A DNA stretch of 64,000 bases, taken from positions 53,218,280 through 53,282,279 of the forward strand of contig NC_068983.1 in NCBI RefSeq assembly GCF_001194135.2, given 5' to 3'. The position numbers and the translations under genes are program-made. Position 1 is the stretch's first letter; every line of letters begins with the position of its first letter. The notes under the pieces were generated by a model, which did not search any database, had not been told where the DNA came from, and saw only the letters and a list, made by a program, of their open reading frames with translations. The DNA is from Octopus bimaculoides. Taxonomy: Eukaryota. This document shows positions 3,588 through 54,239 of the stretch, one piece after another.

Positions 3588-3803
3588 TAAGTCAGTGAAC
3601 TGGCAGAATCATTAGCACACTGGATGAAATGCTTAGTGGTATTTCAACCATCACTATGTTCTGAGTTCAAATTCCATTGAGGTTAATTTTGCTTTTCATC
3701 TTTACAGGGTTAATAAATTAAATACCAGTGAAACACTTGGGTTGATGTAATCGACTATTCTCTTCCCCAAAATTTCAGGCCTTGTGCCTATAGTAGAAAG
3801 GAT
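3588..3803 (+). mobile_element. tRNA-derived SINE (family with CTTTCATC-TTT-GGGGTC-ATAAA core)
   Basis: Head CTGGCAGAA..TGAGTTCAAATTCC and core similar to copies at 19027, 30561 and 37794; flanked by (ATT)n. Confidence 0.75.
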
Positions 3804-6900: not shown

Positions 6901-7770
6901 TATCAGAGGTCCAAATATCAATGATTTCATTTAAAATGGATATCTGTTCCATCACTTTCCTGATCAAAAATCTCAGCCTCATACTCATTTTCTTCCTTTA
7001 ACTCTACTGCCATAGTTTCACTATCTGCATTCTCTTCCTTATCTTTCCGTTCACTGCTGGTCTTACTGTACCTAAGCACCCGTCTGTTAATGCTTTCTAG
7101 TTCAACTGGAGATAACCATTTATTCTTTCTGATGGCTCTAGCTTGGTCACACAGATTCTGTTCACTTAATTCAAATAGGCCTCTGTTGCTCCATCTGTGC
7201 ATTCTTTTCCTATATCCCCTAGCAGGTACTTCATTATCAGAAAGTAGCACTCCATTACAGCCACATTCATTTCTTTCATCCACCTTCTTTCAGCAGTTGC
7301 TTGATGACAATTGGGTCCATGCTGCTCACCTGTGGGGCACCCACCAGGTGAGAGACCTTCACAAGGCATTCCAGCCTCATTCATGCCATTCTTATTTCTA
7401 TTTTTATTTGACATTTCAGCACTCATGATGAGAGTTAGTGAATTTTAGGTTACACAACCATCAGTATTTTATTTTTCCTGTGACACCATCACTGACAAGA
7501 TCTCCACCCTAGGATATAGGATTCCTGTAATCCTGGTTTAATTTTTGGAGTCTCCATCTTCTAGAAGGAGTGTTCAAGCATTATGATTGCTTCTGCCTCT
7601 TAGGTATATGCTATTTTGGTGGCCGTTACCTCATAAGTGTTCATTAGCCTTTATACAGGTCTTGTTCTTCTTCTTGTAGGGTGTCAAAATAACAAGAATC
7701 ATACACCCTCCTCACAGAGCAAGGTTTGCGGGGTTGCCGGTTTAGTTGTCAACATCCCAACCGAAGAAAA
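3970..7770 (-). mobile_element. Near full-length but inactivated R4/Dong-like non-LTR retrotransposon (RT plus restriction-like endonuclease)
   Basis: Collinear minus-strand ORF pieces: N-terminal RW..EMN.AVMECY/GYRKRMH; WKVSGTDGVQGFWLK; FRPISCLPLMWKL; EQKGCR..SRGTKDQLLID; GIF*GDNLSP; FMDDLKLF (~5510-5530); YKYLGI; zinc-knuckle-like ESISHIVSEC..EYKRRHNNV; PDIML..IIDV..EKIEKY nuclease; ends in (AAC/AAT)n tract at ~3975-4005; frameshifts and stops between pieces. Confidence 0.9.
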
Positions 7771-8705: not shown

Positions 8706-8740
<35 letters not shown>

Positions 8741-9075
8741 TTAATGTCTGTTGACCATGCTGGCATGGGTTGGATGGTTTGACTGGGCTGGCATGCTCGA
8801 AGGCTGCACCAGGCTCCAGTCTGATTTGGTTTTCTATGGCTGGATGCCCTTCCTAACGCCAACTGCTCTGAAAGTGTAATGAGTGCTTTATATGTGCCAC
8901 TGGTATGGGTACCATTTGCGCGACACCAGTATCTGCTACGACTGTGATTTTGCACGGATTGACGGGTTTTCTTCTCAAGCTCAAAATAATGCTAAAGTTC
9001 TTGGTCATTTCCTCCGTGAGGTCCAACACTAGAAAGGAACCCAGCCACTTTGCTGCCATCACACCCAATGCTCAG
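8706..9075 (-). mobile_element. (GAT)n-tailed retroposon-like repeat copy
   Basis: (CAT)n then TTTAATGTC..CCATGCTGGCATGGGTTGGA..GGCTGCACCAGGCTCC core. Confidence 0.75.
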
Positions 9076-13709: not shown

Positions 13710-14051
13710 AATATAAACTGTGAGAACGACCCTTAAGGAATCTAGTTAATTATCTCCTAAGGTAAGTTCTTATGCTATATTAGTAACGGTTGCTACATCC
13801 TCTGGAAAAATATATATATATATATATATATCAATGTGTTCAATCCTCTGGGAAAGCCATCAGTGTCTCTCCTAATTTGTTTATTCATTCATATAAAAAT
13901 GTTATTCATGGAAATCATGCAATATTTCAATAAATTAAAACAAGGAGCATGTAAGTTATATCTAACTTTTCATTCAAATGTAAATGTAGAATGTTTTGAA
14001 AAAAAGGTAAACGCTTCATAAATTTCATATTTTCTTTTTCATTTAATTTAG

Positions 14052-14102
14052 GTGTGCCATTATATAAAACAATATTTAAAACTGAATCTAATACAACAGA
14101 GG
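14052..14102 (+). CDS. Putative 51-nt phase-1/phase-1 coding exon A, (G)VPLYKTIFKTESNTTE
   Basis: Pyrimidine tract plus tttag acceptor; GAGG|gtaaat donor; stop-free, frame-preserving; splice sites conserved in the paralogous copy at 24922. Confidence 0.55.
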
Positions 14103-14493
14103 GTAAATCCAAACATTTCTACAAAGATATTCACGTTTTCACTTTCATTATGTGTATAAATTATTCACATATAGTCATAAATAAGAAATCACCTATTTTC
14201 ACAAATCACTTTGAAATTTCTTGTCATCTAAATTATCTTTTTTTATCATTATTTTGTGAGAATTCATTCATCTGATATCACTAAAGAAATATAATGATGA
14301 CTGTTTGTGTTGGTACTGTCTGTGATTCTTTAGATATATTTTTCCTGATGTTATCACTCAGTATATAGTATATCTACTGAAATAACTCACTTCACAATTT
14401 CAATGTTCACCATATTTAGTTATTTTGTATTTTTAGCATCAGTCATTGTAGTCTTATATCATTTGCCTAATTTTCGTTGTTCTTACTCATATA

Positions 14494-14538
<45 letters not shown>

Positions 14539-14879
14539 TTGAAAAAGCAAAAAGAATTTTATTATGGATAAAAACAAATATTTACATTTTCATTAAGATA
14601 TGTTATGCTACTGGTTTCAATCATTTTGAACGACAATTTAGTTATGCTGAAATAAGAGAGAAAATGAATTGAAATAAATTAAATAAAGTTAATTTAGTTA
14701 ATTTCATTTAATTTTACCTTTTATTTCAGCATGACTAAATCATCTTTTAAAGAGATCAAAGCCAGTAGCATATTTTGGTAAAAATGTAAATGCCCTTTCT
14801 TTTATCTACGATAAAGTTCTTAAAGCAATTTTTCTTTTTGTATTTTTTTGATATAACTGTAGTCATGTGAAACCTCTTA

Positions 14880-14915
<36 letters not shown>

Positions 14916-17463
14916 TGTGTATGTTTGTATGTATTTATATATATATATATATGAATATCTTCAACGGTGTTGTTAGACATTTGTCTGTATGTCCATACAT
15001 TATTAAATATATAATGCATATGTTTATGCATTATTAAATCTCAAAGTTTCTGAAATGAGTTATTGTTAAGACAATTATTATTTTTGAGACTATTTCCTCC
15101 ATGTTTAAAGATGAAACAGTGTTTTACTATTTACATCTACAATGTTGATGTTAATATAAAGAAAAATGTTTCATCTCTTATAATGAGGTTAATTGTTGTA
15201 ATAAAAACAATTGTATATGAATTGTGTTGAGACTTATTTCTTTTCTTTTGTGTCAGTGATTTACTCATTATACTAATTACATTTAAATTAAATAACCAAT
15301 TTGTAAGAAGTTATGGATCATTTCATGTTATCTAATGTGACTTGAAGGATGAAAGATCAAGGAATCTCTATTGGTGCTAGTGATCTGGAAAGCATTGGGT
15401 TTGGTCCTACACCTTTTTCTAACAATTTCCATAAACAAGTATTTACAGAAAAGCAAATCTTACCTAAAACTGTGTTTATTATGCTAAGATAACTGATATA
15501 CTAGCAACCACATAAAACTGTAGATGAAATAAATTGCTAAAGCAAAATATACTGATTATCATGATTATCAGTACACACACACACACACACACATTACACA
15601 CTCACATACACACACACACATTACATACAAAGATGATATTACCAAACCAGAAGGGAAAGCATGTGCAGTAAGCATATATGATATTTCTTTCTCTGAAAAT
15701 ACTAAACCTTCTATTCTCTAGAACATGTGAATACGAAGAAAGAAAAACCAATTTTGTTGGTGACAAAGATCAAAAGTATATGAATGGAATGAAATATTGT
15801 TTGCAAAGAGATTGAGAATCTATCATAGAGTTATGACACTTTGCTATTTCTAAGAAAGCCCACATTCAGTACTTTGCCAAATCCACATCAAAGAGATTGA
15901 ACTTCCTTTATGTAGTCAGAAGATACTGATCCATAATACAACCTACTGTATATTATTTCATTGATAAATACAGCCCCATATAATTTTCTGGCATACCTTG
16001 AACTGTCAACAAAACATATCAAATCAAATTCAATGGGAACCATTGCAAATTCTCGTTTTCTCTCCTCTGTGAATATCTTAATGTATAGATTTATATTTAT
16101 TTGTGGTGAGTAAATCAATTATCAAGAACTGTTTCCAATTTCTCATTTCTATTTACTTGTGTCTTCTCTGCATCTACTTTTCTTTGGTTAAGATTATAGC
16201 AGCTCATCTGAGCTGGTGTTCTCTATACTTTCTCTATCATAAGATGTTACTCGTATCCATATCTATTAATTCTCAATGTCTATGTATGGTTATATTTCTA
16301 AGAATCCATTCATAGTTGGATTTATCTGAAAGACTTCTGCTTACACATTTGCATAAACAAATTGACCTCCAATTATTTATATTCAGTGATATGCTATATA
16401 TACCCATACTTTGTAACTCAAAAGGTTTCAGTAATCTTCAGGATCTTTCATTGAGCAAATCTTTGATCAAAGGTATTCAAGTGATGACTGTCCATTTTAT
16501 TTTAACCCCTAAGAATTTACTCTGGCCTACATTATCCATTATCCATCATGTCCGTTCTTTAAGACTGTTGGGTGGGGTGTAAGGGATCATATACATGCAC
16601 TTTCACTGATTCATTGCCCCTCATTTTGTGCGTTTTATTGGGATTTCAGCAGTATAATTTTTCCACATGTTATAAGTTTCCTTCTTTGGTCCTTCATGCT
16701 CTTCGTTACATTTGCCATTAATGTTAACTGAATACGTAATGCTACAATTTTAGATCTACTCCATCATTCTAATGAGACAACATTTTTCAGTGAAAATTAC
16801 AAAATATACTACATAGAAAGCAACAATGAAATAATCAATATAGCAGATTGACTAAATTCTAATAAATATTTTCTAAATTCTGTAAAAGATCAAATACTTC
16901 TGATTTGGATTATGAAATAGTTCTGATGATGCTACTTTTCACTCAATAATTACAAAAACTACTAAAATACAAAGTTTTTTTTGTGCATTGATGATAAAAA
17001 TCAAGACAAATTAACATGCTAGCCTAGTCAATATAAAACATAGAAAAAGCTATTTTTTATTAAAAGATATATAAAGTTGCTTTCTGTTAGTGCATTAATA
17101 ATTCTGTATTTTTGCTTGTGATATCACATTTAAATTGCAGAATTTTAACTTGAAGTGCTTAGAAGTGAATTTGCATTAAAAAACTACAGAAAATAGACAT
17201 TGGAACATTACATAATAAATATCTTAACAGCAACACTAGATCATTAATAAGAAACTTCATGACCATGTATGTATAGGTGTATGTACATAAACATATGTGC
17301 ATGTTATGTATATATGTGCGTGTTATATATATACATACATATATAAATTTATATGCACATATATATTTGTGTGTGTTTGTGTGTATATATATTATATATA
17401 TTTATATGTATGTATATGTAAATATATATATAAATATATATATATATATTTATATATATATAT

Positions 17464-17473
17464 NNNNNNNNNN
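17464..17473. other. Assembly gap (10 N) within TA/TATG microsatellites
   Basis: Directly visible. Confidence 1.
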
Positions 17474-17531
17474 TGTATGTATGTATGTATGTATGTATGT
17501 ATGTATGCATGCATGCATGTATGTATGTATA

Positions 17532-18402
17532 CATGGTGCAGAGATTATATTGTCATCTAAATTACGCAAAAATGAAAGTAACACTGACATCTCATTTTAA
17601 AAGATATATTTACCAAAATTACATAAAAATATCTTGAAATACTAAAGAGTAAATTTCTTCAATAAAATCGCCATTGGCCTCAACCATAGCCTCCAAACGA
17701 TTTCGGAATCTCCTGCAACTCTTTTGGATGATCTCTTTATTTAAGTTGGTGAATGCTGTCATAATCCTTGCCTTCAGTTCATCTTCAGTGTTACAAGAAG
17801 TTTTGTTGGTCTCCCACTCCACTATACTCCACACATGATAATTAAGGTGGTTGCAGTCTGGAGAGTTAGGTGGCCAGATGTTAGGGGTGGTGTGGTTGCA
17901 GAAATTGTCTCAAAGCCATGACTGGGTTCTCCTGCTTTTGTGGTATGGTGCAGAGTCCTGTTGCCAGACATAGGGTCTTCCAGCAGCCACCTTCTTGACC
18001 CAGGGCAGCACTACCTCCTCCAGGCGCTTGATGTAGGCCTCTGTGTTGAACCTGAGGCTGTGTGAGAAGATGAATGGAGGTATAACATTGCCATCACTAG
18101 TGATCACTCCAAACACCATGATGTTAACTGGATGTTTGATTTTTATCACTCTCAGTACATTTCCTCAGATTGACAACCAAACACCCTGAAATATTCATAT
18201 TGGAGCTTCCAGCATGAATGTCAAGAGGTACAGCATATCGTCTCCAAATTTCTGGCAGTGTGAATTGTATCATGATGCTGTTTTTCTCACTGATGGTGCC
18301 CAACTGGCCCTACTATACTGTGTAGTCAACAAGACAAAAAACAAGCAGTGCACATGTGCGAAATTAAGAATATAAAATGGTGACAATTTACCAACCGCAC
18401 CT

Positions 18403-18404
<2 letters not shown>
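17532..18404 (-). mobile_element. Internally deleted Tc1/mariner-superfamily transposon
   Basis: Minus ORFs with KHPVNIMVFGVITSDG..YVWQQDSAPYH and WPPNSPDCN..VWSIVE; imperfect TIRs CA(T/A)GGTGC...ATTGTCA(T/C)C; TA-rich flanks. Confidence 0.85.
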
Positions 18405-18460
<56 letters not shown>

Positions 18461-18521
18461 TACACATACACATGCACACACCACACACACATATATGCAT
18501 ATACATATATACATATATATG

Positions 18522-18559
<38 letters not shown>

Positions 18560-18664
18560 ACAAGAAGGTAGAATGTAAAGGCTTTAATCAGAACCACAAC
18601 AATTATTTCTGTGCCTTAGTAACAGTTGTCAGTTGTTGGTTCATATATTATACATATTATTATA

Positions 18665-19598
18665 AGAGGTGGCATCAAAAAGTTTCCAGACTAGTTCTGT
18701 AGCACATTAACGGGTGGCAGCATATAGTTATGTGTGCAGTGAGAGCTGGCAGTGACCATCAGGAGGCAGTAAGCTGAGTGACACTGCTGTTTTTACTTTG
18801 CAAGTGGTGAAATTTGTGTTTTTGTGATCACATATATGTTGTAGTCTGTGATTTTGTCATGGACAGAAACAAAGAGCCAGACCATCAATTGAGAGTTCTA
18901 CTGTGACATTTTGAAACATTTGAGGGAGGACATTCTGTGAAAGCTACCGGATCTGTGGAGTGTGAGGAATTAGATTTGTCATGATTACAATGCCCCCTGT
19001 CACCAAGCTCTCATTACTCATCAGTTCCTTGTTTCTTTACTGCTCACAAGGGGCTACACAGAGGGGGAAAACAAGGACAAACAGATTAAATCGATTATAT
19101 CGACCCCAGTGCATAACTGGTACTTATTTACTCGACCCCGAAAGGATGAAAGGCAAAGTCGACCTTGGCGGAATTTGAGCTCAGAACATAGCGGCAGACG
19201 AAATACCATTAAGCATTTCGCCCAGTGTGCTAGCGTTTCTGCCAGCTTGCCACCCTCACTCATCAGTTTCTTGCCAAATATAACCTGGTATCACTTCTGG
19301 ACTCACCTTATTCACCAGATTTAGCACCTGCAAACTTCTATCTCCTCCCCAAGATGAAAAAGCAGCTCAAAGGTCACTGTTTTAACACTGTTGTTGAAAT
19401 CCAGAGCAAATTGCAGAAGGTCCTTGACTTTCTTAAGGAAAACAACTTGCAGGCTGGATTCTAAAAGTGGCAGGAATGCTAGGACCAGTGTAGTGTTGTG
19501 CAAGGTGACTATTTCAAAGGAGATAATTTTAAAACCTAGGTAAATAGATTATTTTTTATTAAACATAACTAGTCTAAAAACCTTTTGATACCATCTTG
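18665..19598 (+). mobile_element. Internally deleted mariner element interrupted by a SINE
   Basis: ~30-bp TIRs (AGAGGTGGCATCAAAAAGTTTCCAGACTAG / CAAGATGGTATCAAAAGGTTTTTAGACTAG) with TA flanks; HDYNAPCH..SPYSPDLAPANFYLLPKMK C-terminal transposase remnant. Confidence 0.85.
19027..19257 (-). mobile_element. tRNA-derived SINE with 11-bp target-site duplication
   Basis: ACTCATCAGTT at 19016-19026 and 19258-19268; head GGCAAGCTGGCAGAAACG and core CTTTCATCCTTTCGGGGTCGA. Confidence 0.9.
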
Positions 19599-19773
19599 TA
19601 TAAATAGTATATAAATATGATCCAGCATTAGTTGTGTTCTTGCATGTCATCAGGTGAGTACACAGCTATTGCTGGATCATATTTATATAATATTTAAATT
19701 ATTGCAATATTTTGTTTTGTTTCAGAGAAAGGTTATAATTTTATTCGCTTTGATGACTACAGGTTGCACTACT

Positions 19774-20177
19774 CTCTCTTTTACTCTTTTACTTGTTTCA
19801 GTCATTTGACTGTGGCCATGCTGGAGCACTGCCTTTAATCAAGCAAATCGACCCCAGGACTTATTCTTTGTAAGCCTAGTACTTATTCTATTGGTCCCTT
19901 TTACCGAACCGCTAAGTTACGGGAGCGTAAACTCACCAGCATCAGTTGTCAAGCGATGTTGGGGGGACAAACACAGACACACAAACATATACACACACAC
20001 ATATATATATACATATATACGACGGGCTTCTTTCAGTTTCTGTCAACCAACTCCACTCACAAGGCTTTGGTCGGCCCTAGGCTATAGTAGAAGACACTTG
20101 CCCACGGTGCCCTGCAGTGGGACTGAACCTGGAACCATGTGGTTGGTAAGCAAGCTACTTACCACACAGCCACTCCT
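19774..20177 (-). mobile_element. tRNA-derived SINE, second family
   Basis: Head AGGAGTGGCTGTGTGGTAAG..GGTTCAGTCCC, internal TG/TA tract, tail TGAAACAAGTAAAAGAG; related copy at 39828-40212. Confidence 0.8.
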
Positions 20178-20185
20178 ACTCCTAT

Positions 20186-20190
20186 AAAAA
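20186..20190 (-). terminator. Pol III T-run terminator of tRNA-Glu
   Basis: TTTTT on the minus strand 6 nt downstream of the tRNA 3' end. Confidence 0.7.
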
Positions 20191-20196
20191 TAAGCA

Positions 20197-20268
20197 TTCC
20201 CATGCCGGGAATCGAACCTGAGCCGCCTGGGTGAAAGCCAGGAATCCTAACCACTAGACCACATGGGA
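20197..20268 (-). tRNA. tRNA-Glu (anticodon UUC)
   Basis: 72 nt TCCCATGTGGTCTAGTGGTTAGGATTCCTGGCTTTCACCCAGGCGGCTCAGGTTCGATTCCCGGCATGGGAA; perfect 7-bp acceptor stem, CCTGG/CCAGG anticodon stem, A and B boxes; one A-C mismatch in the T stem. Confidence 0.9.
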
Positions 20269-23200
20269 GTACTAATAATTTCGCACTAATAATTTCCATT
20301 TACATGTTTAGCAGTAGGATTGCCATCAGTCCATCAAAATACTCTGTCAAACCAGAAGTTCACCAATATGTTTCTTTACTACTACTGTCTTTATTTTGTA
20401 TGTTTTCTACATCCATTGTATGACATTCTTAACTTACCTCTGGATTTTGTTATTCTTTTACTTCTTCTATGTTTCTATTTTTCTACTTGAGTGTAATGCC
20501 AACAAGCTGGAATATTGTAAAATTTGCTATAAATTCAGTGCACCAAACTTCCACAAAGTCTTATGTACACATTCATCATCATTCTTTTAATGACACTGTA
20601 AACCACTCCATTACGTTGATGTTTGAATGTTCATGCTGCTTCATTCTGACATGTTTCTGGGTGTTATCCAGAACATGAGCTATAATGTGGGAGGTTGGTA
20701 CATCAGATGTATTCAGACAGAGTTGCCACACAGTTTGTCAGTTCTAAGATTATAGTAGTATTAACAGAGCAATAGAAGAAGAAAATAGATCAATAGATTT
20801 ATAAAGTTGTGAATGAGTTTACCTACTTCATAGAATATACTTCTTTTATTGTTTTCTTGTTGTAACTTGTTCTTTGAATTTTTCATAGAACTGAAATGAT
20901 TACTAACAGTTTTTAGTATGAAATTAATGGCATGTACAATCATATTTCAAATTTGTGTGTAGTCTCTTATGATCTGTTCAGATTCTATTTTATGAAAGTT
21001 TTTCTTGAGGTAATATTATGAAAAATAATTGGTTTGCTCTGCCATGTTTTAAACATGTTGAGCAAACATTCCAGAAATCGTTTTTATACAAATATTTGTG
21101 AACGCTTATTAGAACACATTATAATATCAGCTTGTTAACATCAGAATTATAGAATATTATTTTCCATTTACAAAAATGTTTCACACATTTTACGCTAACA
21201 AAGCTTTGCCAACAATTGTGATGTAACAGTATTTCATATCCATTTAGTGAAGGTGTTGGGTTCCACAGACATTTCTGTAATCAATAATTTTACTGAGATG
21301 CATTCCAAGTTACAAATTACATAAATATATGAATCTCTGAAGATTTCACCCACCTTTTTTATGATAGGCTTGCACAGAGACCAGGAAAAAAACTAGCAAA
21401 TAATGAAATCAGTAGTTATACATAACTCACCTCCATCATACTTTCTGTGTGATTAAACCTGACATTTCTATGAAATAGATCACCAGACGCTGACTGAGAA
21501 TAGCATTGAAATATAACTTATTTAGAAAACGTGGATCAGGACAGATATCTAACACACCTAATATATAAATTCAACTGCCACTAATTAAAAAATAATCTTA
21601 AAAGGTTAAATGATGTCAAAAATATTATAATTAACCTCTCACAAGAACTTGAAGTATGTCTTACAATTGTGAAAAATTTCATCCTTTGTATGCTATACTC
21701 ATCACTAACTACACTCAAAAGTAAAGAATCAATTTTGCTTTTTAAAAACCAAAAGGAAAGAAAAGAAAATTATTTAAAACTCAGTAGGAAAGCATTTAAA
21801 GCTTTGATTATTTTATTCATTTTTGTTTTAGCTGTTTTATTTTGAGAATGATCTTTCCAAACATTTCACATTTCCAATCAATGGCAAATGTAAAAAAAAA
21901 AACAAATTAGTAATTATTGACTTCAGATATTTGAACAAGGACTTAATTTTTTTAGGAAAGGAGTATTGGTAATTCTTTCATTGAAATTGGAAGGAAGAAA
22001 AGCAAAGACAACTCTAGCAGGATTGAAATCTGAATGTGAAAGGCTATATCTAAATTCTGTGAGGCATTTAGTCTGGTATACAACTACATCTGTCTCTCCA
22101 CCACTCTATAAAGTAATATCATCAATAATTTCATTCATGAATGCCGTCATAACTTCTATTCCACAAAGTTCAACATAATGGATTTTCTATTTAAAAAAAC
22201 AGATTTAATCAATTATTGAAAACATTATAAAAATTTGAATGTCTGTATTTCTTATAAAGTAAAGAAAATCCTGGAGATATATTAAAACAAATACATAACC
22301 TTTAGCCAGTGTTTAATATGTTGATCAGTCAATTGTTTATTAGTTCATTGAAAATGAAGATAAAAAAAGAAAAGGAAATTCAACACATCGGAAGAGAATA
22401 TTCATATTAAATATAATGTTATTGTTTCATAATATCTTTGAATAATTGTGTTTATATTGATATCAAGATTATTGTTATATGTACATTTATAACAATATTA
22501 TCTTCATAGAAAGCCACCAGAGTAGCTCTACAGTTTGGTTCTGTATTTGACAAATAATTTTCTATTGCATTCATGAAATTATTTTTATCTTTACTTTGTA
22601 ACAGTAAACAATAGATACAGTAAAAATGCATAGAAATAATATTTCAAAAATATGGAACTCATTTCTGATGGCTGTGAGGAAGTTTCAGTCAAAACAAATC
22701 AAACAATTTTTCTTTTTATTGGCATATAGCATAGTTTTATAAACTCTCAATTTGTATTACACAGTTGGGAATTACTCAGACTATTTTATGGCTTGGTTAC
22801 AGAACAGTAATTGCACAGAAACGGCTTTACAACTGATATCACATTTTCCCTCTTGTCCTGTAAATATAACTTTGTGAAGTTTAACCATTTGAAGAGCTGA
22901 CAAAGCTTAGATAAGCTTGAGAGAAAATGTTTACATACTTCAGGAACCAACTCATGCTAGCATTTAAAAATAGAATATGTTTAATACTGTATTATGCATT
23001 AAATTGATATTAACCTTGTGTGGATATTTTGTGTTAAACCTAGATTTGGGGATTTTCATATTTTGAAACAATTCCTCTATCATTTTGTTTATTTTATTTT
23101 GGGTTATTAGAAAACTAGCACTGGCACCTAGTAATTCCAGTGTATTGTGTAAAAGTTACATACTAGTGTGGAAATTACATACGTGTGTGTGAGTGTTAAT

Positions 23201-23586
23201 GTATGTCTGGGTGTGTGTTTACACACACACAAACACCCACACATACATTCACACTCATAGACATGCATAGACATTTGTAAGTAAATAGTTGACAGTACCT
23301 CTAAACTAGGAAAATCATTATTTTATGATTTGGCATGAATCCAGGCAAAGTGTTTTTTTTAGAAATAATGAAAATTAACAACGGATTAATTATAGAGATT
23401 GGTTTCTAAATAACAAACCAGTATATATGAATATGATATTAATCTTTAAACCATTAACAATGTATCTTTAAAGGGAGTGATCAACATTATATCTCTATTA
23501 TGAAGTTTTGTAGATTGTCACTCAAGAAAAGGAGTCTTTCTAGGTGTTTGTTTTTGTTTCAGTTCCTACACCCATATATATATATA

Positions 23587-23716
23587 TCATCATCATCATC
23601 ATCATCGTTTAATGTCCGCTTTCCATGCTAGCATGGGTTGGACGATTTGTCTGAGGACTGGCGAACCAGATGGCTGCACCAGGCTCCAATCTGATCTGGC
23701 AGAGTTTCTACAGCTG

Positions 23717-23720
<4 letters not shown>
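23587..23720 (-). mobile_element. Truncated (GAT)n-tailed repeat copy
   Basis: Same core as the copies at 1 and 8706; ends in a (TA)n tract. Confidence 0.75.
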
Positions 23721-23772
<52 letters not shown>

Positions 23773-24921
23773 CAGATATAGGAAGATGGTTGGATAACAA
23801 GCTGTTAGAAGCTCTCTTAAGATATATTATTTGTCATGTAATGATTAACATTACATTCATATATATTAGTTTGTTATTAAGTATTGCTGTTAATCTGTAA
23901 TCTTTTCTTACACTGTATGATTGAAACCATGGAGAAAATATTCTGTGTTTACTCAGTCTCAGAGCACCATTACAATAGAATGTTATCATTGTCTAGACTT
24001 CAAAATGTAAATCTTGGATTTACAAACAAAATGTATAAATTTTTAATGAAATAAGAATATTCTATGTTATTTTTCTACTGCATCTTATGCTGAAAATGGA
24101 TTAAACTGAATACCATCACACTTTTGTTTTTCATGTTTTGCAATATCTGAGATAATCTTGACACTTGTAACTATAGTTATAATTTTTCTACTTAATGGTG
24201 TGATCAAGAATTATACAAGCCATGAGATTGGCTATCATATCTTCTGTTTGAAATCTATAGAACTTTATTTTTCTGTAATAAATTTTCAACATATTTTAAA
24301 ATGTTATAACTCATTTTGTTGCCCTTATCATGACAGAGCACTACATTTATATATATAATTTTTTTACACCTGTATAGAAACGTTATTTAATCCCAACCTC
24401 TGTATATTTATGTTTTGATGCATAGAGTTAATTGTGTTTGTCTTTATAAGTTAATAGGAATAGAAGATTTACTTCAATCTATTACATGCACAGATTTAAG
24501 TTCAGTCATGGATTCCATGCTATTAAACTATTTTTAAATGTTTACTTGGTTGCATTTTGCTTAGAATTATTAAAGCTTTTGAAGTATAATGAAATTAAAC
24601 CATCTACTCAGCTACAACAATTACTCACCGCCTTTGATTTTTAAATTTTCAGATAAACACAAAAGTGAAGTGAATATATTTTATTAGTTATTTCTGATTT
24701 TTTTTTTCTTCAATGTCAGAGACTGAAATTTTATCCTCTTTTGCCATTGAAACGTGTTTAATTGAAATGTTGTTCATATTTTAGTCTCTAAATATAAGCT
24801 AAGAAATCTTAATTGATACTTGAAATAAATTTAATTTTTCATTTTTATGTATAGTTAAAATATTTCAAAAAAAACTTTTTCCATTTTGATTATGAGTATC
24901 ATATTTTCTCTTCCTGTTTAG

Positions 24922-24972
24922 ATATGGCACAAAATGAAACAATATTTAATAATGACTTTAAGAACACAGAGG
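24922..24972 (+). CDS. Putative 51-nt phase-1/phase-1 coding exon B, (D)MAQNETIFNNDFKNTE
   Basis: ttttctcttcctgtttag acceptor; GAGG|gtaact donor; 37/51 nt identical to exon A with no indels. Confidence 0.55.
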
Positions 24973-27819
24973 GTAACTCAGAACATTTCTATAATGTTAT
25001 TCACAACCATCACGCTAGTTATGTTTATAAATGAATTATTCACATACATTCATAAATATGAAATCACCTATTTTCACAAATCACTGTCAAATCACTCTCT
25101 AAAACTTCCTCTATTCATGCCTCAATTTTATCTATTGAAATTCCAACTATTAAATTATGTCTTTACTATACTTCAAAATTTGAATGACTTTGGTTGAATA
25201 TTGGAACAACATGCCAACTTCGTGTGCTTTTAATAACTATGTTATGCTTGATGTTTTGAATATCTATTTTTGTTAAGTTACCATCACTCAATAAATTTTT
25301 CACGTATAAACATACTTCACAATCAAAATTGTATTTAACTTTACTAAACACTTTTGTTTTCCCTGTCTCTGTTCACAAGATTATTCCATATTCAGTTTAT
25401 TGTAATATTTTTTGTTCATTATTTTCTATTCATAATGATTTCCCCACATCTTTAAATTTAATGATTCTATCTTCCAGTTTTCTCTCCCTTTCCAATTGCT
25501 ATTTTTGATATGCAGTCTGGTAAAAAGACCATTTCTAATTAACATATTATGCTCATGTTATGGATAAAATGTAAAATATAAAAGTAATTCTTAAGAAAGA
25601 TTAGTTAATACCATGCAGGAAAATACAAATTAAATTCTAACTCATAATATATAAACAAAACAATAACTGCAATATACTTCTATTAAGAATGGAATGATAG
25701 GCATTGTTTATTTCAACAAGGGCTGCTGTCAGTTTAGTTTCTCGTGGTTTTGGGTATTTTTCGTGATCTTTATTACACTGAGCATTTGAAATCCGTTGGT
25801 ATGGCTCTTATTTATTCCTTCTTCCAACGTTGTTTGCAGGATGAAAATTATGTAATACTTGTTGAATAGTAATTCATGCTACACAGCGCTTGTTCAGGTG
25901 ACACATTCAAGGTTTTTTTTTTTTATAGACAAGATGGATGGATATAGTATTTTCCCTATCTGCTTGTCAAGTTGTCCTCCTTTTTTCATGGCTTTTGCAA
26001 CAAATTTTTTTTTACCTTCTTGTCGTTCTTCATGAAATCTTAAACCCATTAATTTGTATTTTAGCTGGCAGTTATCTTTCATAATACAATGTAACTTTGT
26101 CCGAATGACGGGCAAAATTTTACAAGTTTCCAGTCAGTGAATGTCATAGTTGTAGATTGCTTGGTTCTAAGCTTAGCATAGAAGAATGCTAAAATGCAAA
26201 GCAAGAGACCACAGTTTTGGTAAAATGGGTTAGATTTACTATAAGATAGTTTGGTTAGCAAAAATCTAACATATCTATTCTAAGATCAAATCTTATTTTG
26301 CTTCTCATTTATCTTTTCCTCAGTTCTATTTGTTCTTCTCCCTTTCTGCAATATTTTTGTTTTTGTTTTTTTTTTCCTATTGTTTTTTTATGTTTTACTT
26401 TTCAATATAGAAAAGTTCCTCAGATCTTATATATGCTATATATGTGTCTGTGTATTTCTATATAAATGAGTACGAATGTATTATCAGTATATGCATACTC
26501 TAGTTCAAGCTAAAATAGATGTTATTTAGTAGTATGTAAAATTAATTTCTACATTCACAACAAATCTTAGGTAGATTAAATTGTAACAACATTCATCATA
26601 AAGATGTGCATTGATTAGGATAATATATTGTAGATCAGATTCATATCACCAACATATTAGTACTATGAATAAAAAATATATATGAAATAAGGGCTTTCAT
26701 TGGTTGGGTTGCATGTGAAGACCTGGGCAATGTTTTTTTTTTTGTGCATAGAATACTGGAAGCTACTCATGCATAGCAAGTCTCTCCTATCCACACCAGT
26801 GATGTTGTTCAAGGAAAAAGGTTATTGCTTTTGGGCCACAGTTTAGCAGTAATGTTATTACAGGCATTGTTCATTGAACACAAAGAACTGGAATAAATAC
26901 TGCAAGGCATCTCATCCAATGCTCTAATAGTTCTGCCAATCTACCACCCTGAATTGGTGAATTTTGTTTCATTAACTCTAAAAGGAAGAAATGCAAAGTT
27001 GACATTGACTGCAAAATGTCAAAATAAAATGCCATTATGCATTTTATCCATCTCTCTAATAACTCAGCCAATTTGCTGCCTTCATAGTACCATGGACTAA
27101 TTGTGAAGTAGACAACTAAGGTTCTATTGTAAAAACAATATGGTGATGATGGTAGTCTTTTGTAGTCCAAGAAGCACAGTCATGCAATTTCTTGCTGAAC
27201 AACCTGAACGAATGAGTTGTTTATAATGCTCAAATGTATTTACTGTACATTAGCTGACTTCCTCCATCAAATCAACATTGACTGATCAGGTGCATGGTGT
27301 ACCACATGTCAGGTGCCAAAGTGATTGCAAAGCAATGTGGAATGAATGAGCTCACTCCAAAAAAAATAGCATAACCTGGTCCACGTATTGAAACCCTCAT
27401 CTTGCAACTATGAGAGTAGCACCCAAACCACTAAGCTATGTACCTTCACATGAAAAATATAAAATTGTCCATTATCACTTTTACTTCAATAAAAATCTTT
27501 CCTCCTCTAAATTGAAATTGCATTGCAAGAAATATTATTCTGAGTTATTATTCCCCTCTTATGAAATTTAAGGTAATCTACCTCTGCACAAAGTTCATCA
27601 TAAGTTTTAAACAAACTTTTGATATGATTCCTTAATTCCTGATGTTTGATAGTCATTTAGTATCATCAATAATTTGTGTTATCAAACATGTAAGAATTGT
27701 TTTGACCAACCTGAGAGCCATGAGGATATATACTGAGTCATCTCATAAATAATGAAGTTTTTTCAATTGCATGAACTAAAAATCAGAGGGAGACAGGATA
27801 AACTACTTGCATCAACTTG

Positions 27820-29101
27820 CTATTAAGGCAGGTAGTAATTTTACCTTGTACTTATTCTTAGTGCAAATTTTGAAGAGTGCAGTTCGATTTTAACAATTAT
27901 TTTTTCAAAGCTATAATGGAAATGACAAAGGAGCATATTTGGCATATTTTGTATTATGAGTTCAATAAAGGCAACAACGCAACAGAAAGTGCGCAAAATA
28001 TTAATGCAGTATATGAGGATCAGACAGTAAACATAAACCAGTGTCAATGGTGATTCCAGAAATTCTGAGCTGGAAACTACAGCCTAGAAGATGAGCCTCA
28101 TCCTGGAAGATATGTAGATCTTAATGAAGACACTCTGCAAGATCTGTTGATCTTGATGAAGACATCCTGTGAACCCTGGTGGAACAAAATCCCATTGTGA
28201 CTGTTGAGGAACTAGCAGGAAGCTTGGATTTGGTCATTCAACCATTCATCGATACCTGTGTGCCATCGAAAAAGTCAGCAAATTGAGTCAATGGGTTCTT
28301 CACAAACTTTCCAATTCTAATCATACACAGAGAGTGAATGTGTGCTCTTCTTTGTTATCATGTCTCATGAATGAACTTTTTTTTGGCCCAAATAGTGACT
28401 GGTGACGAGAAATGGGTTCTCTATAAAAATGTCAAGTGCCTAAGACAGTGGGGTAGGGAAAGGAAAAACACTAGCAACTCAGGTTAAAGAAGGTATTTAA
28501 CCATGTAAGGTGTTGTTATCTGTTTGGTGGGATGTGAAAGGTTTAGTTTACTTAGAATTTTTAAACCCAAACCAAATGATAACAAAGGGGGATACTGCAA
28601 GCAGCTTGAGCAGCTTAAGTCAGCACTAGAAGAAAAACAACCATCTTTGGTTTCAAGATGAAAGGTGTTCTTCCATCAGGATAATGCTCAGNNNNNNNNN
28701 NAAGATGAAAGGTGTTCTTCCATCAGGATAATGCTCAGCCACATACAGCAAAGATGACATTCCAAAGGCTGGAGCAGTTTGAATGGGAAACGATGCCCCC
28801 ACCCATCAGATTTGCCGGACATTGCCCCATCTGATTATCATTTATTCTGCAGTCTTCAAAATCATTCAGATGGAAAAAATATGAATTTTGCAGATGAGGT
28901 GAGGATAGTACTGAAGGAGTATTTTTCATCATGGACAAGTGAAGTTTGGATGAAGGGGGCCTTACAAGTCTACCAGATAGATGGAAGAACATTGTAGAAA
29001 ATGAAGGAGAGTATATTTTAGAATAAAAAAGAACTTTGTTTATTTTAATTTTGAAAAATAAAAGAAGTATAAATGACTGCATTATTTATGGGATGACCTA
29101 A
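27820..29101 (+). mobile_element. Decayed near full-length mariner (DD34D-type) transposon
   Basis: ATG at 27916: MEMTKEHIWHILYYEFNKG..SLEDEPHPGR, WVLHKL, VTGDEKWVLYKN, HQDNAQPH, DIAPSDYHLF; right TIR ..TTTATGGGATGACCTAA-TA; stops and an assembly gap inside. Confidence 0.9.
28692..28701. other. Assembly gap (10 N) flanked by a 37-bp identical overlap
   Basis: 28655-28691 equals 28702-28738. Confidence 0.95.
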
Positions 29102-30560: not shown

Positions 30561-30779
30561 TAAGGTGGCGAGCTGGCAGAAATGTTTGCACATCATGCAA
30601 AATGTTTAGCAATATTTCATCCATCTTTACGTTCTGAGTTTGAATTCCACCAAGGTTGACTTTGCCTTTCATCTTTTCGGGGTCAATAAATTAGATACCA
30701 GTTGCATACTGGGGTCGATCTAATTGACTGGCCACCCCTCCTCCAAAATTTCGAGCCTTGTGCCTAGAGTAGAAAAGGA
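30561..30779 (+). mobile_element. tRNA-derived SINE
   Basis: AAGGTGGCGAGCTGGCAGAAA head, GGGGTCAATAAATT core, CTTGTGCCTAGAGTAGAAA tail. Confidence 0.85.
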
Positions 30780-33675: not shown

Positions 33676-33947
33676 TTTTTTTTTTGTTTCTTCCTTTGAT
33701 ATATTTATCTTCATTGTACACTTCTCTGATTACTGTTTTACTGCTTTATATATTTTTATGCTTTTTCAGGTATATCCATTTGCCTGTCTGACTCCTAGTA
33801 TTATTTGTTTGTAACCTCTTTGTTTCATATTCTTAATCATTTTATTTATATGATTTTTATCTATCCATATCCTATGCAGAATATGTCATGGATACTTTGC
33901 AAATTGATAATTTGCAAATTAATAGCAACTAATATATATACATATAT

Positions 33948-34500
33948 CATCATCATCATTTAACGTCCATTGTCCATGTTGGCATGGTTGGATGGTTTGG
34001 CTGGGCTGCCACATTGGAGGCTGCACCAGACTCCAGTCTGATTTGGCATGGTTTTCTATGGCTGGATGCCCTTCCTAACACCAACCACTCTGAGAGTATG
34101 ATGGGTGCTTTTACGTGCCACTGGCATGGGTGCCATTTGCATGACACCAGTATCTACTATGTCTGCGATTTTGCTCTGCTTCATGGGTCTTTTTTTCAAG
34201 CATGACATAATGCCAAATGTTTCGGTCATTGCCTCTGTGAGGCCCAACACTCGAAACGAACTCAGCCACTTTGCCTCCGTGAGGCCCAATGCTCAAAAAG
34301 GAAGTCAGCCACTTTGCTTCCATGAGACCCAACACTCAAAAAGTGTTCTTTACATGCCACCAGCACGGGACTTCTACCACAGGTTCCCTCCACAGAGATT
34401 GGCACTTTTTCACACATGAGCTGCCTTCATCCATACACATCCTATGACCATACCAGCACAGCCATCTCTCTTGCACAACACATCTGATGCCTCTTATGTA
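33948..34500 (-). mobile_element. (GAT)n-tailed repeat copy with internal 42-43 bp tandem units
   Basis: Family core plus units at 34229-34270, 34271-34313 and 34314-34343. Confidence 0.75.
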
Positions 34501-37016: not shown

Positions 37017-37793
37017 AACAAACAAGATGAGGACAAATATCTGTCAAATGTAAATAATGTACATGATTCCTCATCTCTTAAAAAAAATAAGCAAAACACA
37101 GGCATACAACTGAGTTGTAGGTAGATTTACTTCTGCCTTTATAGCGCATAATGAAAACATTGTAGGAATCTATGCAGCATGTGTACTACAGCAGTACTAT
37201 GCATAGCATTAATACTGGGATTGAAAGGCAGGAGTGAATTATGCCTATGTAATCTGCAAAACAATAAAATAGCTTGCATTTTATGCCTAGTAATCAGAGT
37301 AACCTTCATAACCTTATTGAATTAGGTGCATATTTTGCCATGAGAGGAAAATGTTACTATCGATCTATTTTATTCAGGGTTGGCACTGCCTACCTTGGCT
37401 ACCCAGGTGGCACATCCCTGACATACATATATATGAATGTATGCATATATGTATGTATACTTCTATATATTTATAGACATATATGTATATATATGTATAT
37501 GTATATATTTATCATCATCATCATTATCATCGTCATCAATTGACATCTTTTCCATGCTGACATGGATCGAGCAGTTTGACATGAACAGATGAGCCAAAAG
37601 GCTGTGCTGAGTTGTAATGTCTGCTTTAGCATGGTTTTGAGAGCTGGATGCCCTTATTAATGCCAACCACTTCACAGAGTGTACTGGGTGCTCTCTTCAT
37701 GGCACCTGCACTGATGAGGTCAACAAGTATCCATGAGACAGGCCCCTTCAACTCAGTGGGGTTAAGAAAGTATAATAGAAGGACAGGAGCAGG

Positions 37794-53861: not shown

Positions 53862-54084
53862 ATTTAATGGCTCGTTATCGACGAAGCTTTCAGAACAATG
53901 CAAACAACCATAAAGCTCCAATAGTAATTGAGAGCAGCATGAGGGCATCACATCAAATTGTCAGTCATGTCTTGAACATTCTTCTAGAAGAAGTTATAGG
54001 TTTTACTAATGTCATTGTTAAAGATATTGAAACCATGAACACCACAGTAATGCTTAACAGAATTGTTGGCTGTCCAATATCCAG
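53862..54084 (+). CDS. Internal coding exon (phase 1 to phase 2) of a receptor with a Venus kinase receptor-like N-terminal ectodomain
   Basis: Strong tttctatttattttcag acceptor; CCAG|gtcaga donor; 223 nt stop-free: (D)LMARYRRSF..PIVIESSMRASHQIVSHVLNILLEEVIGFTNV..TMNTTVMLNRIVGCPIS(R). The pattern R.SHQI.S..L.I.LEEV.G..NV resembles invertebrate VKRs as recalled; family call unverified. Confidence 0.7.
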
Positions 54085-54239
54085 GTCAGAAAATAATTAT
54101 AATTTCTTCTATATTTTACAGTAGACAATTATTAAAAAATATATCAGTATTTGAATGTTTACTAACATATTTATTGATTTATTGTCATTTTTTAATATGC
54201 ATATTTGGATAATTCTTATTGTGTTCTAATTCATGCTAA

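What the first reader, a model, noticed from the sequence alone, without database searches (positions are those of the whole stretch)
14052..24972. Two paralogous 51-nt symmetric exons 10.9 kb apart: a candidate cassette or mutually exclusive exon system in a receptor N-terminus
Seen: both exons have pyrimidine tract+AG, end in ACAGAGG|gtaa, are 51 nt, phase 1-1, stop-free and 37/51 identical. They lie in a duplicated block (~13895-14460 vs ~24760-25420) with conserved downstream intron (GAAATCACCTATTTTCACAAATCACT identical in both). Either exon splices in frame onto the 53862 exon (..TE-DLMARY). Each encodes an N-glycosylation sequon (NTT in A, NET in B). Inference: exon duplication gave this receptor either a tandem 17-aa glycosylated extension or switchable N-terminal variants. 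I know of no description of this in VKR-like receptors. No docking/selector complement was spotted by eye.
Basis: partly seen in the sequence, partly recalled or inferred. Interest (0 to 1): 0.75.

Follow-up and report, generated by a model that had tools for sequence, protein, structure and literature searches.

The report
Duplicated exon-like block in receptor intron
Two diverged copies of a 265-base segment that look like 51-base exons lie far upstream of a genuine, strongly conserved exon of a Venus-kinase-type receptor gene, but nothing shows that they code for protein, so an old non-coding duplicate is somewhat more likely than a new splicing switch.

Summary
The sequence facts hold. Two 51-nt segments (14052-14102, 24922-24972) are 37/51 identical. 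Each follows a pyrimidine tract plus AG, precedes GTAA, and is open in the phase that joins the exon at 53862. The homologous block is only about 265 bp (13957-14217 vs 24826-25092, 72%), not the ~600 bp claimed, and the window holds no third copy.

The 53862-54084 exon is real. It matches exon 2 of VKR-like receptor tyrosine kinases with both intron positions conserved, and it differs at 1 of 223 bases from a related species whose introns are 85% identical.

Exon status of A and B is unproven. All 13 in-frame differences change the amino acid. The proposed frame ties for the lowest amino-acid identity of the six frames. The best-conserved part is a UCAC-rich stretch 60-115 nt into the supposed intron. 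The nemertean and bivalve genes join exon 1 directly to exon 2. No transcript or orthologous DNA could be retrieved, and no docking complement exists.

In favour: neutral divergence would keep all the splice-like features in only 2-4% of simulations.

My estimate is non-coding intronic duplicate ~0.55, real lineage-specific cassette exon(s) ~0.3, and a docking-type mutually exclusive system ~0.03. RNA junction reads would decide.

The parts
13957..14217 (+). Copy A of the duplicated ~265-bp block
   Evidence: 72% identical to 24826-25092 over 272 columns, E 1.8e-35. A profile built from both copies finds no third copy in the window; the next best match has E 0.17.
14052..14102 (+). Candidate 51-nt exon A (phase 1-1; VPLYKTIFKTESNTTE). 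Exon status unproven.
   Evidence: Pyrimidine tract plus AG before it, GTAAAT after it, open frame. No coding signature against copy B.
14163..14217 (+). Best-conserved part of the block in copy A: UCAC/YCAY-rich stretch holding the identical 26-mer (14185-14210)
   Evidence: 50/55 identical. The 26-mer is unique to the two copies. 8 YCAY and 6 TCAC in the 120 nt after exon A, placing it in the top 1.3% and 0.15% of windows.
24826..25092 (+). Copy B of the duplicated block
   Evidence: In the 1.5 kb around B the only significant match in the window is copy A.
24922..24972 (+). Candidate 51-nt exon B (phase 1-1; MAQNETIFNNDFKNTE). Exon status unproven.
   Evidence: Pyrimidine tract plus AG before it, GTAACT after it, open frame.
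25038..25092 (+). Best-conserved UCAC/YCAY-rich stretch in copy B, holding the identical 26-mer (25060-25085)
   Evidence: 9 YCAY and 7 TCAC in the 120 nt after exon B, placing it in the top 0.8% and 0.05% of windows.
53862..54084 (+). Genuine coding exon: second coding exon of a VKR-like receptor tyrosine kinase, encoding the start of an OpuAC-like N-terminal domain. Phase 1 at its start, phase 2 at its end.
   Evidence: 23 homologs in the representative library, including Tubulanus XP_074645062, which has ANF_receptor plus a tyrosine kinase domain. Intron positions match those in Solemya and Tubulanus. 1 difference in 223 nt against a related species whose introns are about 85% identical.
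17464..17473 (.). Assembly gap between A and B
   Evidence: Flanked by (TA)n and (TGTA)n. It lies in the supposed intron and the join cannot be verified.
28692..28701 (.). Assembly gap between B and C
   Evidence: The 37 bases before and after the gap are identical (AAGATGAAAGGTGTTCTTCCATCAGGATAATGCTCAG), inside a mariner-like element. This is an unmerged overlap, so B and C are contiguous.

Best explanation
A and B are two old, diverged copies of a ~265-bp piece of non-coding DNA. They lie in the very long, transposon-laden first intron (or upstream region) of a VKR-like receptor tyrosine kinase gene. The only demonstrable coding exon of that gene in the window is 53862-54084.

The ancestral piece happened to contain a pseudo-exon: a pyrimidine tract plus AG, 51 open bases, then GTAA. 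About three of this quality occur per 64-kb strand of this AT-rich sequence. It was copied once, either by a small local duplication or as a short non-autonomous element, and both copies still show the pseudo-exon.

What is shown:
- the duplication and its limits;
- the absence of any protein-coding signature;
- the reality and identity of exon C;
- the direct exon-1-to-exon-2 structure in two other phyla.

What is inferred:
- the transcript normally splices from an unseen signal-peptide exon upstream of the window straight to 53862;
- if anything in the block is under constraint, it is the UCAC-rich 55 nt at its 3' edge (an RNA-binding-protein or DNA-binding platform, or an element terminus) rather than the 51-mers.
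For: - No coding signature. All 13 in-frame differences are nonsynonymous, spread 5/4/4 over codon positions, and 5/16 residues are identical. Over the 88-nt ungapped stretch the proposed frame has 13/29 identity, tied for the lowest of the six frames, and nearly every frame shows 2 synonymous vs 18 nonsynonymous differences.
- Conservation does not peak on the 'exon'. Identity is 64% upstream, 65% in the pyrimidine tract, 72.5% in the exon, 68% at intron +7..+60 and 91% at intron +61..+115.
- Homology is confined to about 265 bp and stops abruptly just after the most conserved stretch. Sequence that diverged at the same rate would still align if a larger unit had been duplicated.
- In Solemya and Tubulanus, exon 1 (signal peptide plus C-L-x-x-x, ending G|GT in phase 1) splices directly to the exon-C homolog. 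Batillaria and one Logan-derived N-terminus also have only a short linker.
- No protein in 5.8 billion resembles any translation of either block.
- No exon carrying a start codon and signal peptide lies upstream of A or between B and C.
- Open frames, sequons and pseudo-exons are common at this base composition.
- The surrounding sequence is typical repeat-rich intron.
Against: - Neutral divergence of 28% would keep the pyrimidine tract, AG, GTAA and open frame together in only 2-4% of simulated copies.
- Both 51-mers kept exactly the same length, while the rest of the alignment carries gaps in 16 columns.
- An 11-nt stretch across the donor (ACAGAGGGTAA) is identical in both copies.
- Both copies carry a sequon, at different positions (about 2.5% joint chance).
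- A 26-nt identical run is unlikely at 72% identity (p about 0.04). The UCAC/YCAY cluster sits where intronic splicing enhancers of alternative exons usually sit.
- No hallmark of a mobile element was found: only two copies in 64 kb, no tRNA-like head or known RNA family, and no terminal inverted repeats or target-site duplications on inspection.
Confidence: 0.55

Rival explanations
1. A and/or B are real, lineage-specific cassette exons made by exon duplication. Each, when included, would insert 17 residues with one N-glycosylation sequon between the signal peptide and the first strand of the receptor's N-terminal domain. Because both are 51 nt and phase 1-1, they could be included independently. 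The conserved UCAC/YCAY cluster 60-115 nt downstream of each would act as an intronic splicing enhancer of the Nova/Pasilla type, making inclusion tissue-specific.
For: - Strong acceptor-like and donor-like signals are retained in both copies; 2-4% is expected under neutrality.
- Equal length with no indels. Correct strand and phase for exon C. The last base is G, as in exon 1 of Solemya and Tubulanus.
- Only 6 such candidates exist on the plus strand and two of them are these.
- The YCAY/TCAC cluster is in the top 1% / 0.1% of windows and is conserved between copies.
- The region is no more structured than shuffles (z +0.8 and +0.7), which is compatible with a single-stranded protein-binding site.
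- The linker before the domain varies in length among homologs (about 11-20 residues), so an extension is structurally tolerable.
Against: - No coding constraint in any frame.
- The exon is not the conserved core.
- Absent from the homologous genes of two other phyla and from all protein databases searched.
- No transcript-derived protein containing exon C exists in the databases, so no junction could be seen.
- The required upstream signal-peptide exon was not found.
- With both exons included the linker would be about 43 residues, far longer than in any homolog.
Confidence: 0.3
2. A and B form a mutually exclusive exon pair. Selection would work through competing RNA structures: a docking site pairing with a selector next to each exon, as in Dscam-type clusters.
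For: Same length, same phase, paralogous origin, and a conserved intronic element next to each exon.
Against: - The best complement to the conserved 26-mer anywhere in the window is -19.7 kcal/mol, against a microsatellite. 16 of 30 shuffled versions did as well or better.
- Because both exons are multiples of three, including both does not break the frame, so nothing enforces exclusivity.
- The exons are about 10.9 kb apart, so steric exclusion is impossible.
- Only two copies exist; there is no array.
Confidence: 0.03
3. The block is a member of a dispersed short mobile-element family (SINE or MITE size), and the splice-like motifs are incidental parts of the element.
For: - The size is about 265 bp, with an abrupt 3' boundary directly after the most conserved stretch.
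- The host intron is full of mobile-element remnants.
Against: - Only two copies in 64 kb, even with a profile search.
- No copy in the 4.6-kb contig of the related species.
- No tRNA-like head, known RNA family, poly-A tail, terminal inverted repeat or target-site duplication (inspection).
- No exact match to the conserved core in the metagenome collection (a weak test).
- Genome-wide copy number could not be measured.
Confidence: 0.15
4. Copy A is a decayed or mis-assembled first exon. An in-frame ATG at 13991 is followed by a signal-peptide-like translation (KKGKRFINFIFSFSFNLG) running into VPLYK...
For: The translation upstream of A looks like the n-, h- and c-regions of a signal peptide, and the exon ends in phase 1 with G like exon 1 of the homologs.
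Against: - The reading is ATG TTT TGA: a stop two codons after the ATG.
- The hydrophobic look is simply what a pyrimidine tract translates to.
- In copy B the matching stretch is not hydrophobic (LKYFKKNFFHFDYEYHIFSSCLD) and is out of frame because of indels.
- The conserved Cys-Leu that follows the signal peptide in three of the four available homolog N-termini is absent from A.
Confidence: 0.02

Closest known systems
Venus kinase receptors (VKR): receptor tyrosine kinases with an extracellular Venus-flytrap module (Ahier et al. 2009, PMC2680970; Vanderstraete et al. 2013, PMC3703292)
   Same: Exon C is homologous to the second coding exon of proteins with ANF_receptor (Venus flytrap), a transmembrane segment and an insulin-receptor-like tyrosine kinase (P0022; the Solemya locus). 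Lophotrochozoan vkr genes are reported to have several exons before those encoding the flytrap.
   Different: - The homologs found here carry an extra ~360-residue N-terminal domain with weak OpuAC / glycine-betaine-binding similarity. The passages of the VKR papers that I searched do not describe it.
- The term 'alternative' does not occur in the 2013 family paper.
- Only one exon of the gene is in the window, so full membership cannot be shown here.
Tandemly duplicated alternative exons, including mutually exclusive clusters with docking/selector RNA pairing (Dscam1 exon 6 type). From general knowledge, not tested against a database.
   Same: Two paralogous candidate exons of identical length and phase in one intron, each with a conserved adjacent intronic element.
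   Different: - No protein similarity is retained (5/16).
- No docking complement.
- About 10.9 kb apart rather than closely spaced, and only two copies.
- Symmetric length means exclusivity is not enforced by frame.
- Use as exons is unproven.
Cassette exons controlled by downstream YCAY clusters bound by Nova/Pasilla-family proteins. From general knowledge of the Nova 'RNA map'.
   Same: 8-9 YCAY motifs (6-7 of them UCAC) within 120 nt downstream of each candidate donor. This is conserved between copies, in a region that is not more structured than shuffles.
   Different: No binding or splicing data. The motif cluster could equally be part of a repeat or a DNA-level element. Enrichment was measured only against this one window.
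Intronic pseudo-exons and short duplicated or mobile intronic segments
   Same: - Exon-like signals without coding constraint, in an AT-rich, repeat-laden, very long intron.
- A background of about 3 comparable pseudo-exons per 64-kb strand.
- A small, sharply bounded unit of homology.
   Different: Both copies keeping every splice-like feature is less than expected by chance (2-4%). No mobile-element hallmarks were found.

Membership tests
VKR-like receptor tyrosine kinase gene (host gene) | Sequence homology of the encoded peptide to family members | tested here: met
   The exon C peptide hits 23 proteins at E<=1e-3, including full-length Tubulanus P0022. A profile of 22 homologs retrieves 29 more, including a Batillaria N-terminus.
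VKR-like receptor tyrosine kinase gene (host gene) | Venus-flytrap (ANF_receptor) module, transmembrane segment and tyrosine kinase domain in the same protein | not testable with these tools
   Those exons lie outside the window. They are present in the homologs: P0022 has ANF_receptor at 1.4e-52 and PK_Tyr_Ser-Thr at 8.4e-89. In Solemya the neighbouring gene call has ANF_receptor plus Pkinase.
VKR-like receptor tyrosine kinase gene (host gene) | Conserved exon boundaries with family members | tested here: met
   Exon C starts after a phase-1 intron (..cag|AT) and ends in phase 2 three codons after Gly-Cys, exactly as in Solemya and Tubulanus.
Protein-coding exon (A and B) | Splice acceptor and donor signals, and an open frame in the phase of the neighbouring exon | tested here: met
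   About 3 such candidates per 64-kb strand are expected by chance.
Protein-coding exon (A and B) | Coding constraint between paralogs: excess of synonymous change and frame-specific amino-acid conservation | tested here: not met
   0 synonymous vs 13 nonsynonymous differences in the 51-mers. The proposed frame ties for the lowest identity of six frames (13/29).
Protein-coding exon (A and B) | Exon better conserved than flanking intron | tested here: inconclusive
   Exon 72.5% vs 64-68% in the immediate flanks, but 91% in the distal downstream stretch. Cross-species comparison was possible only for exon C.
Protein-coding exon (A and B) | A counterpart in homologous genes or proteins | tested here: not met
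   Solemya and Tubulanus join exon 1 directly to exon 2. No protein matches any frame of the blocks.
Protein-coding exon (A and B) | Presence in spliced transcripts | not testable with these tools
   No transcript-derived protein containing exon C is in the databases. No RNA-seq access.
Mutually exclusive exon cluster with competing RNA structures | A docking sequence complementary to a selector next to each variable exon | tested here: not met
   Best duplex -19.7 kcal/mol. 16 of 30 shuffles were equal or better.
Mutually exclusive exon cluster with competing RNA structures | Paralogous exons of equal length and phase | tested here: met
   Both 51 nt, phase 1-1, 37/51 identical.
Nova/Pasilla-type YCAY-regulated cassette exon | A cluster of YCAY motifs within about 200 nt of the regulated exon | tested here: met
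   8 and 9 YCAY in 120 nt against a mean of 2.4. TCAC counts of 6 and 7 against a mean of 0.48.
Nova/Pasilla-type YCAY-regulated cassette exon | Protein binding and protein-dependent inclusion | not testable with these tools
   Needs CLIP or knock-down data.
Dispersed mobile element (SINE/MITE) | Many copies; terminal inverted repeats or a tRNA-like head with an A-rich tail; target-site duplications | tested here: not met
   Two copies only in the window. No tRNA or Rfam match in the blocks. No terminal repeats or target-site duplications on inspection. Genome-wide copy number is not testable here.

The most novel reading that the evidence does not exclude
The two 51-mers are real, lineage-specific, independently regulated cassette exons created by exon duplication. 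Each would add a 17-residue glycosylated spacer ahead of the N-terminal ligand-binding region of a VKR-like receptor. Each would be controlled by a conserved UCAC/YCAY intronic enhancer that was duplicated together with the exon. This would be a splicing-regulated N-terminal variation not described for this receptor family.
Probability: 0.25. Interest if true: 0.45.

Novelty: new member of a known kind. Interest (0 to 1): 0.27.

Why it matters
If the 51-mers are used, a poorly known invertebrate receptor family would gain switchable, glycosylated N-terminal spacers. VKRs have reported roles in reproduction. The locus would also be a clean example of an exon duplicated together with its splicing enhancer. 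That would interest people who work on VKRs or on the evolution of alternative splicing, but it would not change a field.

If they are not used, which I think somewhat more likely, the locus is an ordinary intronic duplicate. It is then a useful caution: in 32% G+C DNA, pyrimidine tract plus AG, short open frames, GTAA and N-x-T sequons are cheap.

The solid gains are elsewhere:
- exon 53862-54084 is firmly identified as exon 2 of a VKR-like gene, with intron positions conserved across three phyla;
- these lophotrochozoan receptors carry an extra OpuAC-like N-terminal domain.

Tried and rejected
1. Orthologous DNA for A and B. Exact look-ups of the two longest ORFs across the blocks found nothing. 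A search with six concatenated ORFs from both strands of both blocks gave no hit at E<=10. Only exon C could be compared across species (L001).
2. Transcript evidence. Exon C retrieves only genomic ORFs, with no spliced product.
3. A third copy or an exon array. Self-BLAST and an nhmmer profile found none.
4. Not supported.
5. A docking/selector complement. Not above shuffles.
6. A structured RNA or known RNA family in the blocks. No Rfam or tRNA hit. Folding z-scores were +0.8 and +0.7.
7. A minus-strand gene. The minus frame KCLDLPSVVLDSVLNIV / KCSELPSVFLKSLLNIV has the highest identity (17/29), tied with one other frame. That is within the 13-17 range of all six frames, and copy B has stops.
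8. The signal-peptide exon in the window. Scans for ATG plus a hydrophobic stretch plus a phase-1 GT donor, with or without a Cys-Leu motif, gave only candidates inside repeats or with weak donors. Examples are 7132-7225, 18990-19119 and 37179-37248.
9. Copy A as a first exon with its own signal peptide. Rejected because of the TGA two codons after the ATG and because the frame is not conserved in B.
10. The 'CLD' just upstream of exon B as a homolog of the Cys-Leu after the signal peptide in other species. Rejected, because those codons lie in the pyrimidine tract with no ATG or hydrophobic stretch upstream.
11. A haplotype or assembly duplicate. Rejected, because 72% identity is far too low.
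12. An exact scan of the metagenome collection for the conserved core. No match; this is uninformative for an animal genome.
13. The organism could not be named. The best homologs are lophotrochozoan. The related species is known only as run SRR11869384, which appears in no paper in the library.

Full report
**1. What is in the sequence**

The window is 32.3% G+C and has two 10-N gaps, at 17464-17473 and 28692-28701.

Segment A is 14052-14102 and segment B is 24922-24972. Both are 51 nt and 37/51 identical. Each is preceded by a pyrimidine-rich tract ending in TTTAG. Each ends in ACAGAGG and is followed by GTAA.

Skipping the first two bases (intron phase 1 on both sides), they read VPLYKTIFKTESNTTE and MAQNETIFNNDFKNTE without stops. 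A carries NTT and B carries NET. The final G plus the AT that opens the exon at 53862 gives Asp and continues LMARYRRSF. B also begins with AT, so A to B is in frame as well.

**2. Extent of the duplication**

BLAST, Smith-Waterman and a more permissive BLAST over 6.4 kb on either side all give the same block: 13957-14217 vs 24826-25092, 197 of 272 columns identical (72%), E 1.8e-35 to 1.3e-41. The next collinear match has E about 0.9.

An nhmmer profile of the two copies finds no third copy on either strand; the next best match has E 0.17.

The right edge is abrupt. Homology ends a few bases after the most conserved stretch.

**3. The gaps**

Gap 1 lies between (TA)n and (TGTA)n microsatellites inside the supposed A-B intron. 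It touches no candidate exon, but the join cannot be verified, so the 10.9-kb spacing is only an estimate.

Gap 2 is flanked on both sides by the same 37 bases inside a mariner-like element. It is an unmerged overlap, and B and C are truly contiguous.

A, B and C each sit on a different contig of the scaffold.

**4. The host gene**

The peptide of 53862-54084 has no Pfam hit on its own. Its only close relative is P0001, an ORF on a 4.6-kb Logan genomic contig. That contig is about 85% identical to the window over 53452-58053, so it comes from a related species.

Against that 85% background, the exon differs at 1 of 223 positions, and the change is synonymous. The first 100 nt of downstream intron are 96% identical. 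This is what a constrained exon looks like in this genome.

An exhaustive HMMER search found 23 relatives. They include:
- a full-length Tubulanus polymorphus protein of 1353 aa with ANF_receptor, a tyrosine kinase domain and a weak OpuAC match in the N-terminal third;
- a Solemya velum gene model, followed immediately by a model with ANF_receptor plus kinase.

Exon C is the second coding exon. In Solemya, exon 1 encodes MILTVSWRECLLLITQLSTLYASCLEKH and ends ..CATG|GTGAGC in phase 1, and exon 2 starts ..ccag|AT. In Tubulanus, exon 1 encodes MLKLIAMLLWLTMVDPFVTARCLNQT and ends ..ACAG|GTACGG. Exon 2 starts 85 bp later. In both species, and in the window, exon 2 ends in phase 2 three codons after a conserved Gly-Cys.

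**5. Are A and B exons? Evidence against**

- *Coding signature.* All 13 differences within the reading frame change the amino acid. They fall 5/4/4 on codon positions 1/2/3, and only 5 of 16 residues are identical. Over the 88-nt ungapped stretch, the six frames give 13-17 identical residues out of 28-29. The proposed frame is tied for lowest. Nearly every frame shows 2 synonymous against 18 nonsynonymous differences. No frame behaves like coding sequence.
- *Conservation profile.* Identity is 64% upstream, 65% in the pyrimidine tract (with a 4-nt gap), 72.5% in the exon, 5/6 at the donor, 68% at intron +7..+60 and 91% at intron +61..+115. The core of the block is not the 51-mer.
- *Homologs.* The two annotated genes join exon 1 directly to exon 2. 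All four available N-termini (Tubulanus, Solemya, Batillaria, one Logan product) have about 11-20 residues between signal peptide and domain. With neither A nor B, the window's gene would fit that range. With both, the linker would be about 43 residues.
- *Database matches.* No protein among 5.8 billion matches any frame of the blocks.
- *Missing first exon.* No exon with a start codon and signal peptide lies in the window. The first exon is probably upstream of the window, and A and B sit in a first intron of more than 50 kb. That intron holds reverse-transcriptase and Mos1/mariner remnants and SINE-like repeats.
- *Size of the duplicated unit.* Sequence that diverged at the block's own rate (72%) is still alignable. 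The lack of homology outside 265 bp therefore means the copied unit was small. A small unit fits a transposed or patch-copied fragment at least as well as an exon duplication.

**6. Are A and B exons? Evidence for**

- A scan with strict criteria finds 6 candidates on the plus strand, two of which are A and B. The criteria were at least 75% pyrimidines in the 18 nt before AG, a GTAA donor, length 30-150 and a multiple of three, and an open frame in phase 1-1. The minus strand has 3, and composition-preserving shuffles average 2.8. One ancestral pseudo-exon in a 50-kb intron is thus expected by chance.
- Keeping all four features in a copy after 28% neutral divergence occurred in only 2.0% (starting from A) and 3.7% (starting from B) of simulations. 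The criteria were fitted afterwards, so this overstates the case.
- The 51-mers have no indel, while the rest of the alignment has gaps in 16 columns.
- Each has a sequon at a different position: 15-17% chance each given the composition, about 2.5% jointly.
- A 26-nt identical run has p about 0.04 at this identity.
- The 120 nt after each candidate donor hold 8 and 9 YCAY motifs (window mean 2.4; top 1.3% and 0.8%). They hold 6 and 7 TCAC (mean 0.48; top 0.15% and 0.05%).
- The region is not more structured than shuffles (z +0.8 and +0.7).

From general knowledge, a downstream YCAY cluster is the classical arrangement for Nova/Pasilla-dependent inclusion of alternative exons. That is a resemblance, not a test.

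**7. Mutually exclusive splicing**

The best complement to the conserved element anywhere in the window is -19.7 kcal/mol, against a microsatellite. 16 of 30 shuffled elements do as well or better. Because both exons are multiples of three and about 10.9 kb apart, neither frame nor steric hindrance would enforce exclusivity. I give this reading about 3%.

**8. Weighing**

The retention of splice-like signals and the conserved UCAC-rich element argue for function. Three points argue against coding exons: the lack of any coding signature, the absence of the exons from homologs, and the small, sharply bounded unit.

My estimates:
- non-coding intronic duplicate (local patch or short element), possibly with a constrained UCAC-rich core: about 0.55. 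A dispersed mobile-element family (about 0.15) is one variant of this non-coding reading and is not additional to the 0.55;
- at least one real, lineage-specific cassette exon: about 0.3;
- docking-type mutually exclusive system: about 0.03;
- decayed first exon: about 0.02.

**9. Comparison with what is known**

The host gene belongs with the Venus kinase receptors (PMC2680970, PMC3703292). Lophotrochozoan vkr genes are reported to have 15-18 exons, with several before those encoding the flytrap. The 2013 family paper does not use the word 'alternative'.

If real, A and B would be a new instance of duplicated cassette exons, which is a known kind. If not, they are an ordinary intronic duplicate carrying a pseudo-exon.

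**10. Verdict**

Interest is low to moderate. Junction-spanning RNA reads, the genome-wide copy number of the block and the orthologous intron of the related species would settle it.

Noticed in passing
window 53862-54184; L001 317-622: Exon C differs at 1 of 223 bases from a related species whose introns are about 85% identical, so synonymous sites are conserved too. The first 100 nt of the downstream intron are 96% identical. Constraint beyond the protein sequence (splicing control or RNA structure) may act here.
   Followed up: partly
P0022 residues ~30-390 (Tubulanus), L002 and L003; window 53862-54084 encodes its first ~73 residues: The VKR-like receptors homologous to this gene carry an extra ~360-residue domain ahead of the Venus flytrap. 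It has weak similarity to bacterial glycine-betaine-binding proteins: Pfam OpuAC E 4e-4, just under the cut-off, and PDB 4xz6 E 0.024. The searched passages of the VKR papers do not describe it. The intron positions flanking its first exon are identical in a nemertean, a bivalve and this window.
   Followed up: partly
window 28655-28738: The 10-N gap at 28692-28701 is flanked by the same 37 bases on both sides, inside a Mos1/mariner-like element. This is an unmerged contig overlap, so the assembly carries a small false duplication here.
   Followed up: yes
window 20197-20268 (-): A tRNA-Glu(TTC) lies between A and B (Rfam 57.7 bits; also found by ARAGORN). It could be a real tRNA gene or the head of a tRNA-derived SINE.
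   Followed up: no
window 14552-14821: A ~270-bp stretch matches its own reverse complement (73% over 277 columns). It is a foldback or palindromic element about 335 bp downstream of block A, with no counterpart near B.
   Followed up: no
window 13991-14051: An in-frame ATG TTT TGA lies upstream of exon A. It is followed by a translation that mimics a signal peptide (KKGKRFINFIFSFSFNLG). I judged this an artefact of translating the pyrimidine tract.
   Followed up: yes
window 37179-37248 (+): An ORF, MCTTAVLCIALILGLKGRSELCL, is followed by one base and GTAATC (phase 1). It looks like a signal peptide plus Cys-Leu, as in exon 1 of the homologs, and lies between B and C. The donor is weak, the split base is T rather than G, and it sits next to repeated sequence. 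If it were the real first exon, A and B would lie upstream of the coding region.
   Followed up: partly
window 4100-7400 (-), 27877-28053 (+), 44538-44705 (+), 17619-18149 (-): Mobile-element remnants: a reverse-transcriptase fragment (RVT_1, E 3e-4), two Mos1 transposase HTH_48 fragments (1e-13 and 1e-7), and a further ORF pair (17619-18149) that looks mariner-like by eye but had no Pfam hit.
   Followed up: partly
window 19026-19250 vs 37796-38026, 3600-3754, 30564-30727; 23578-23720 vs 33932-34068, 8718-8846: Two short dispersed repeat families (77-83% identity) each have several copies in the window. This shows what a true multi-copy element looks like here, in contrast to the two-copy A/B block.
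   Followed up: partly
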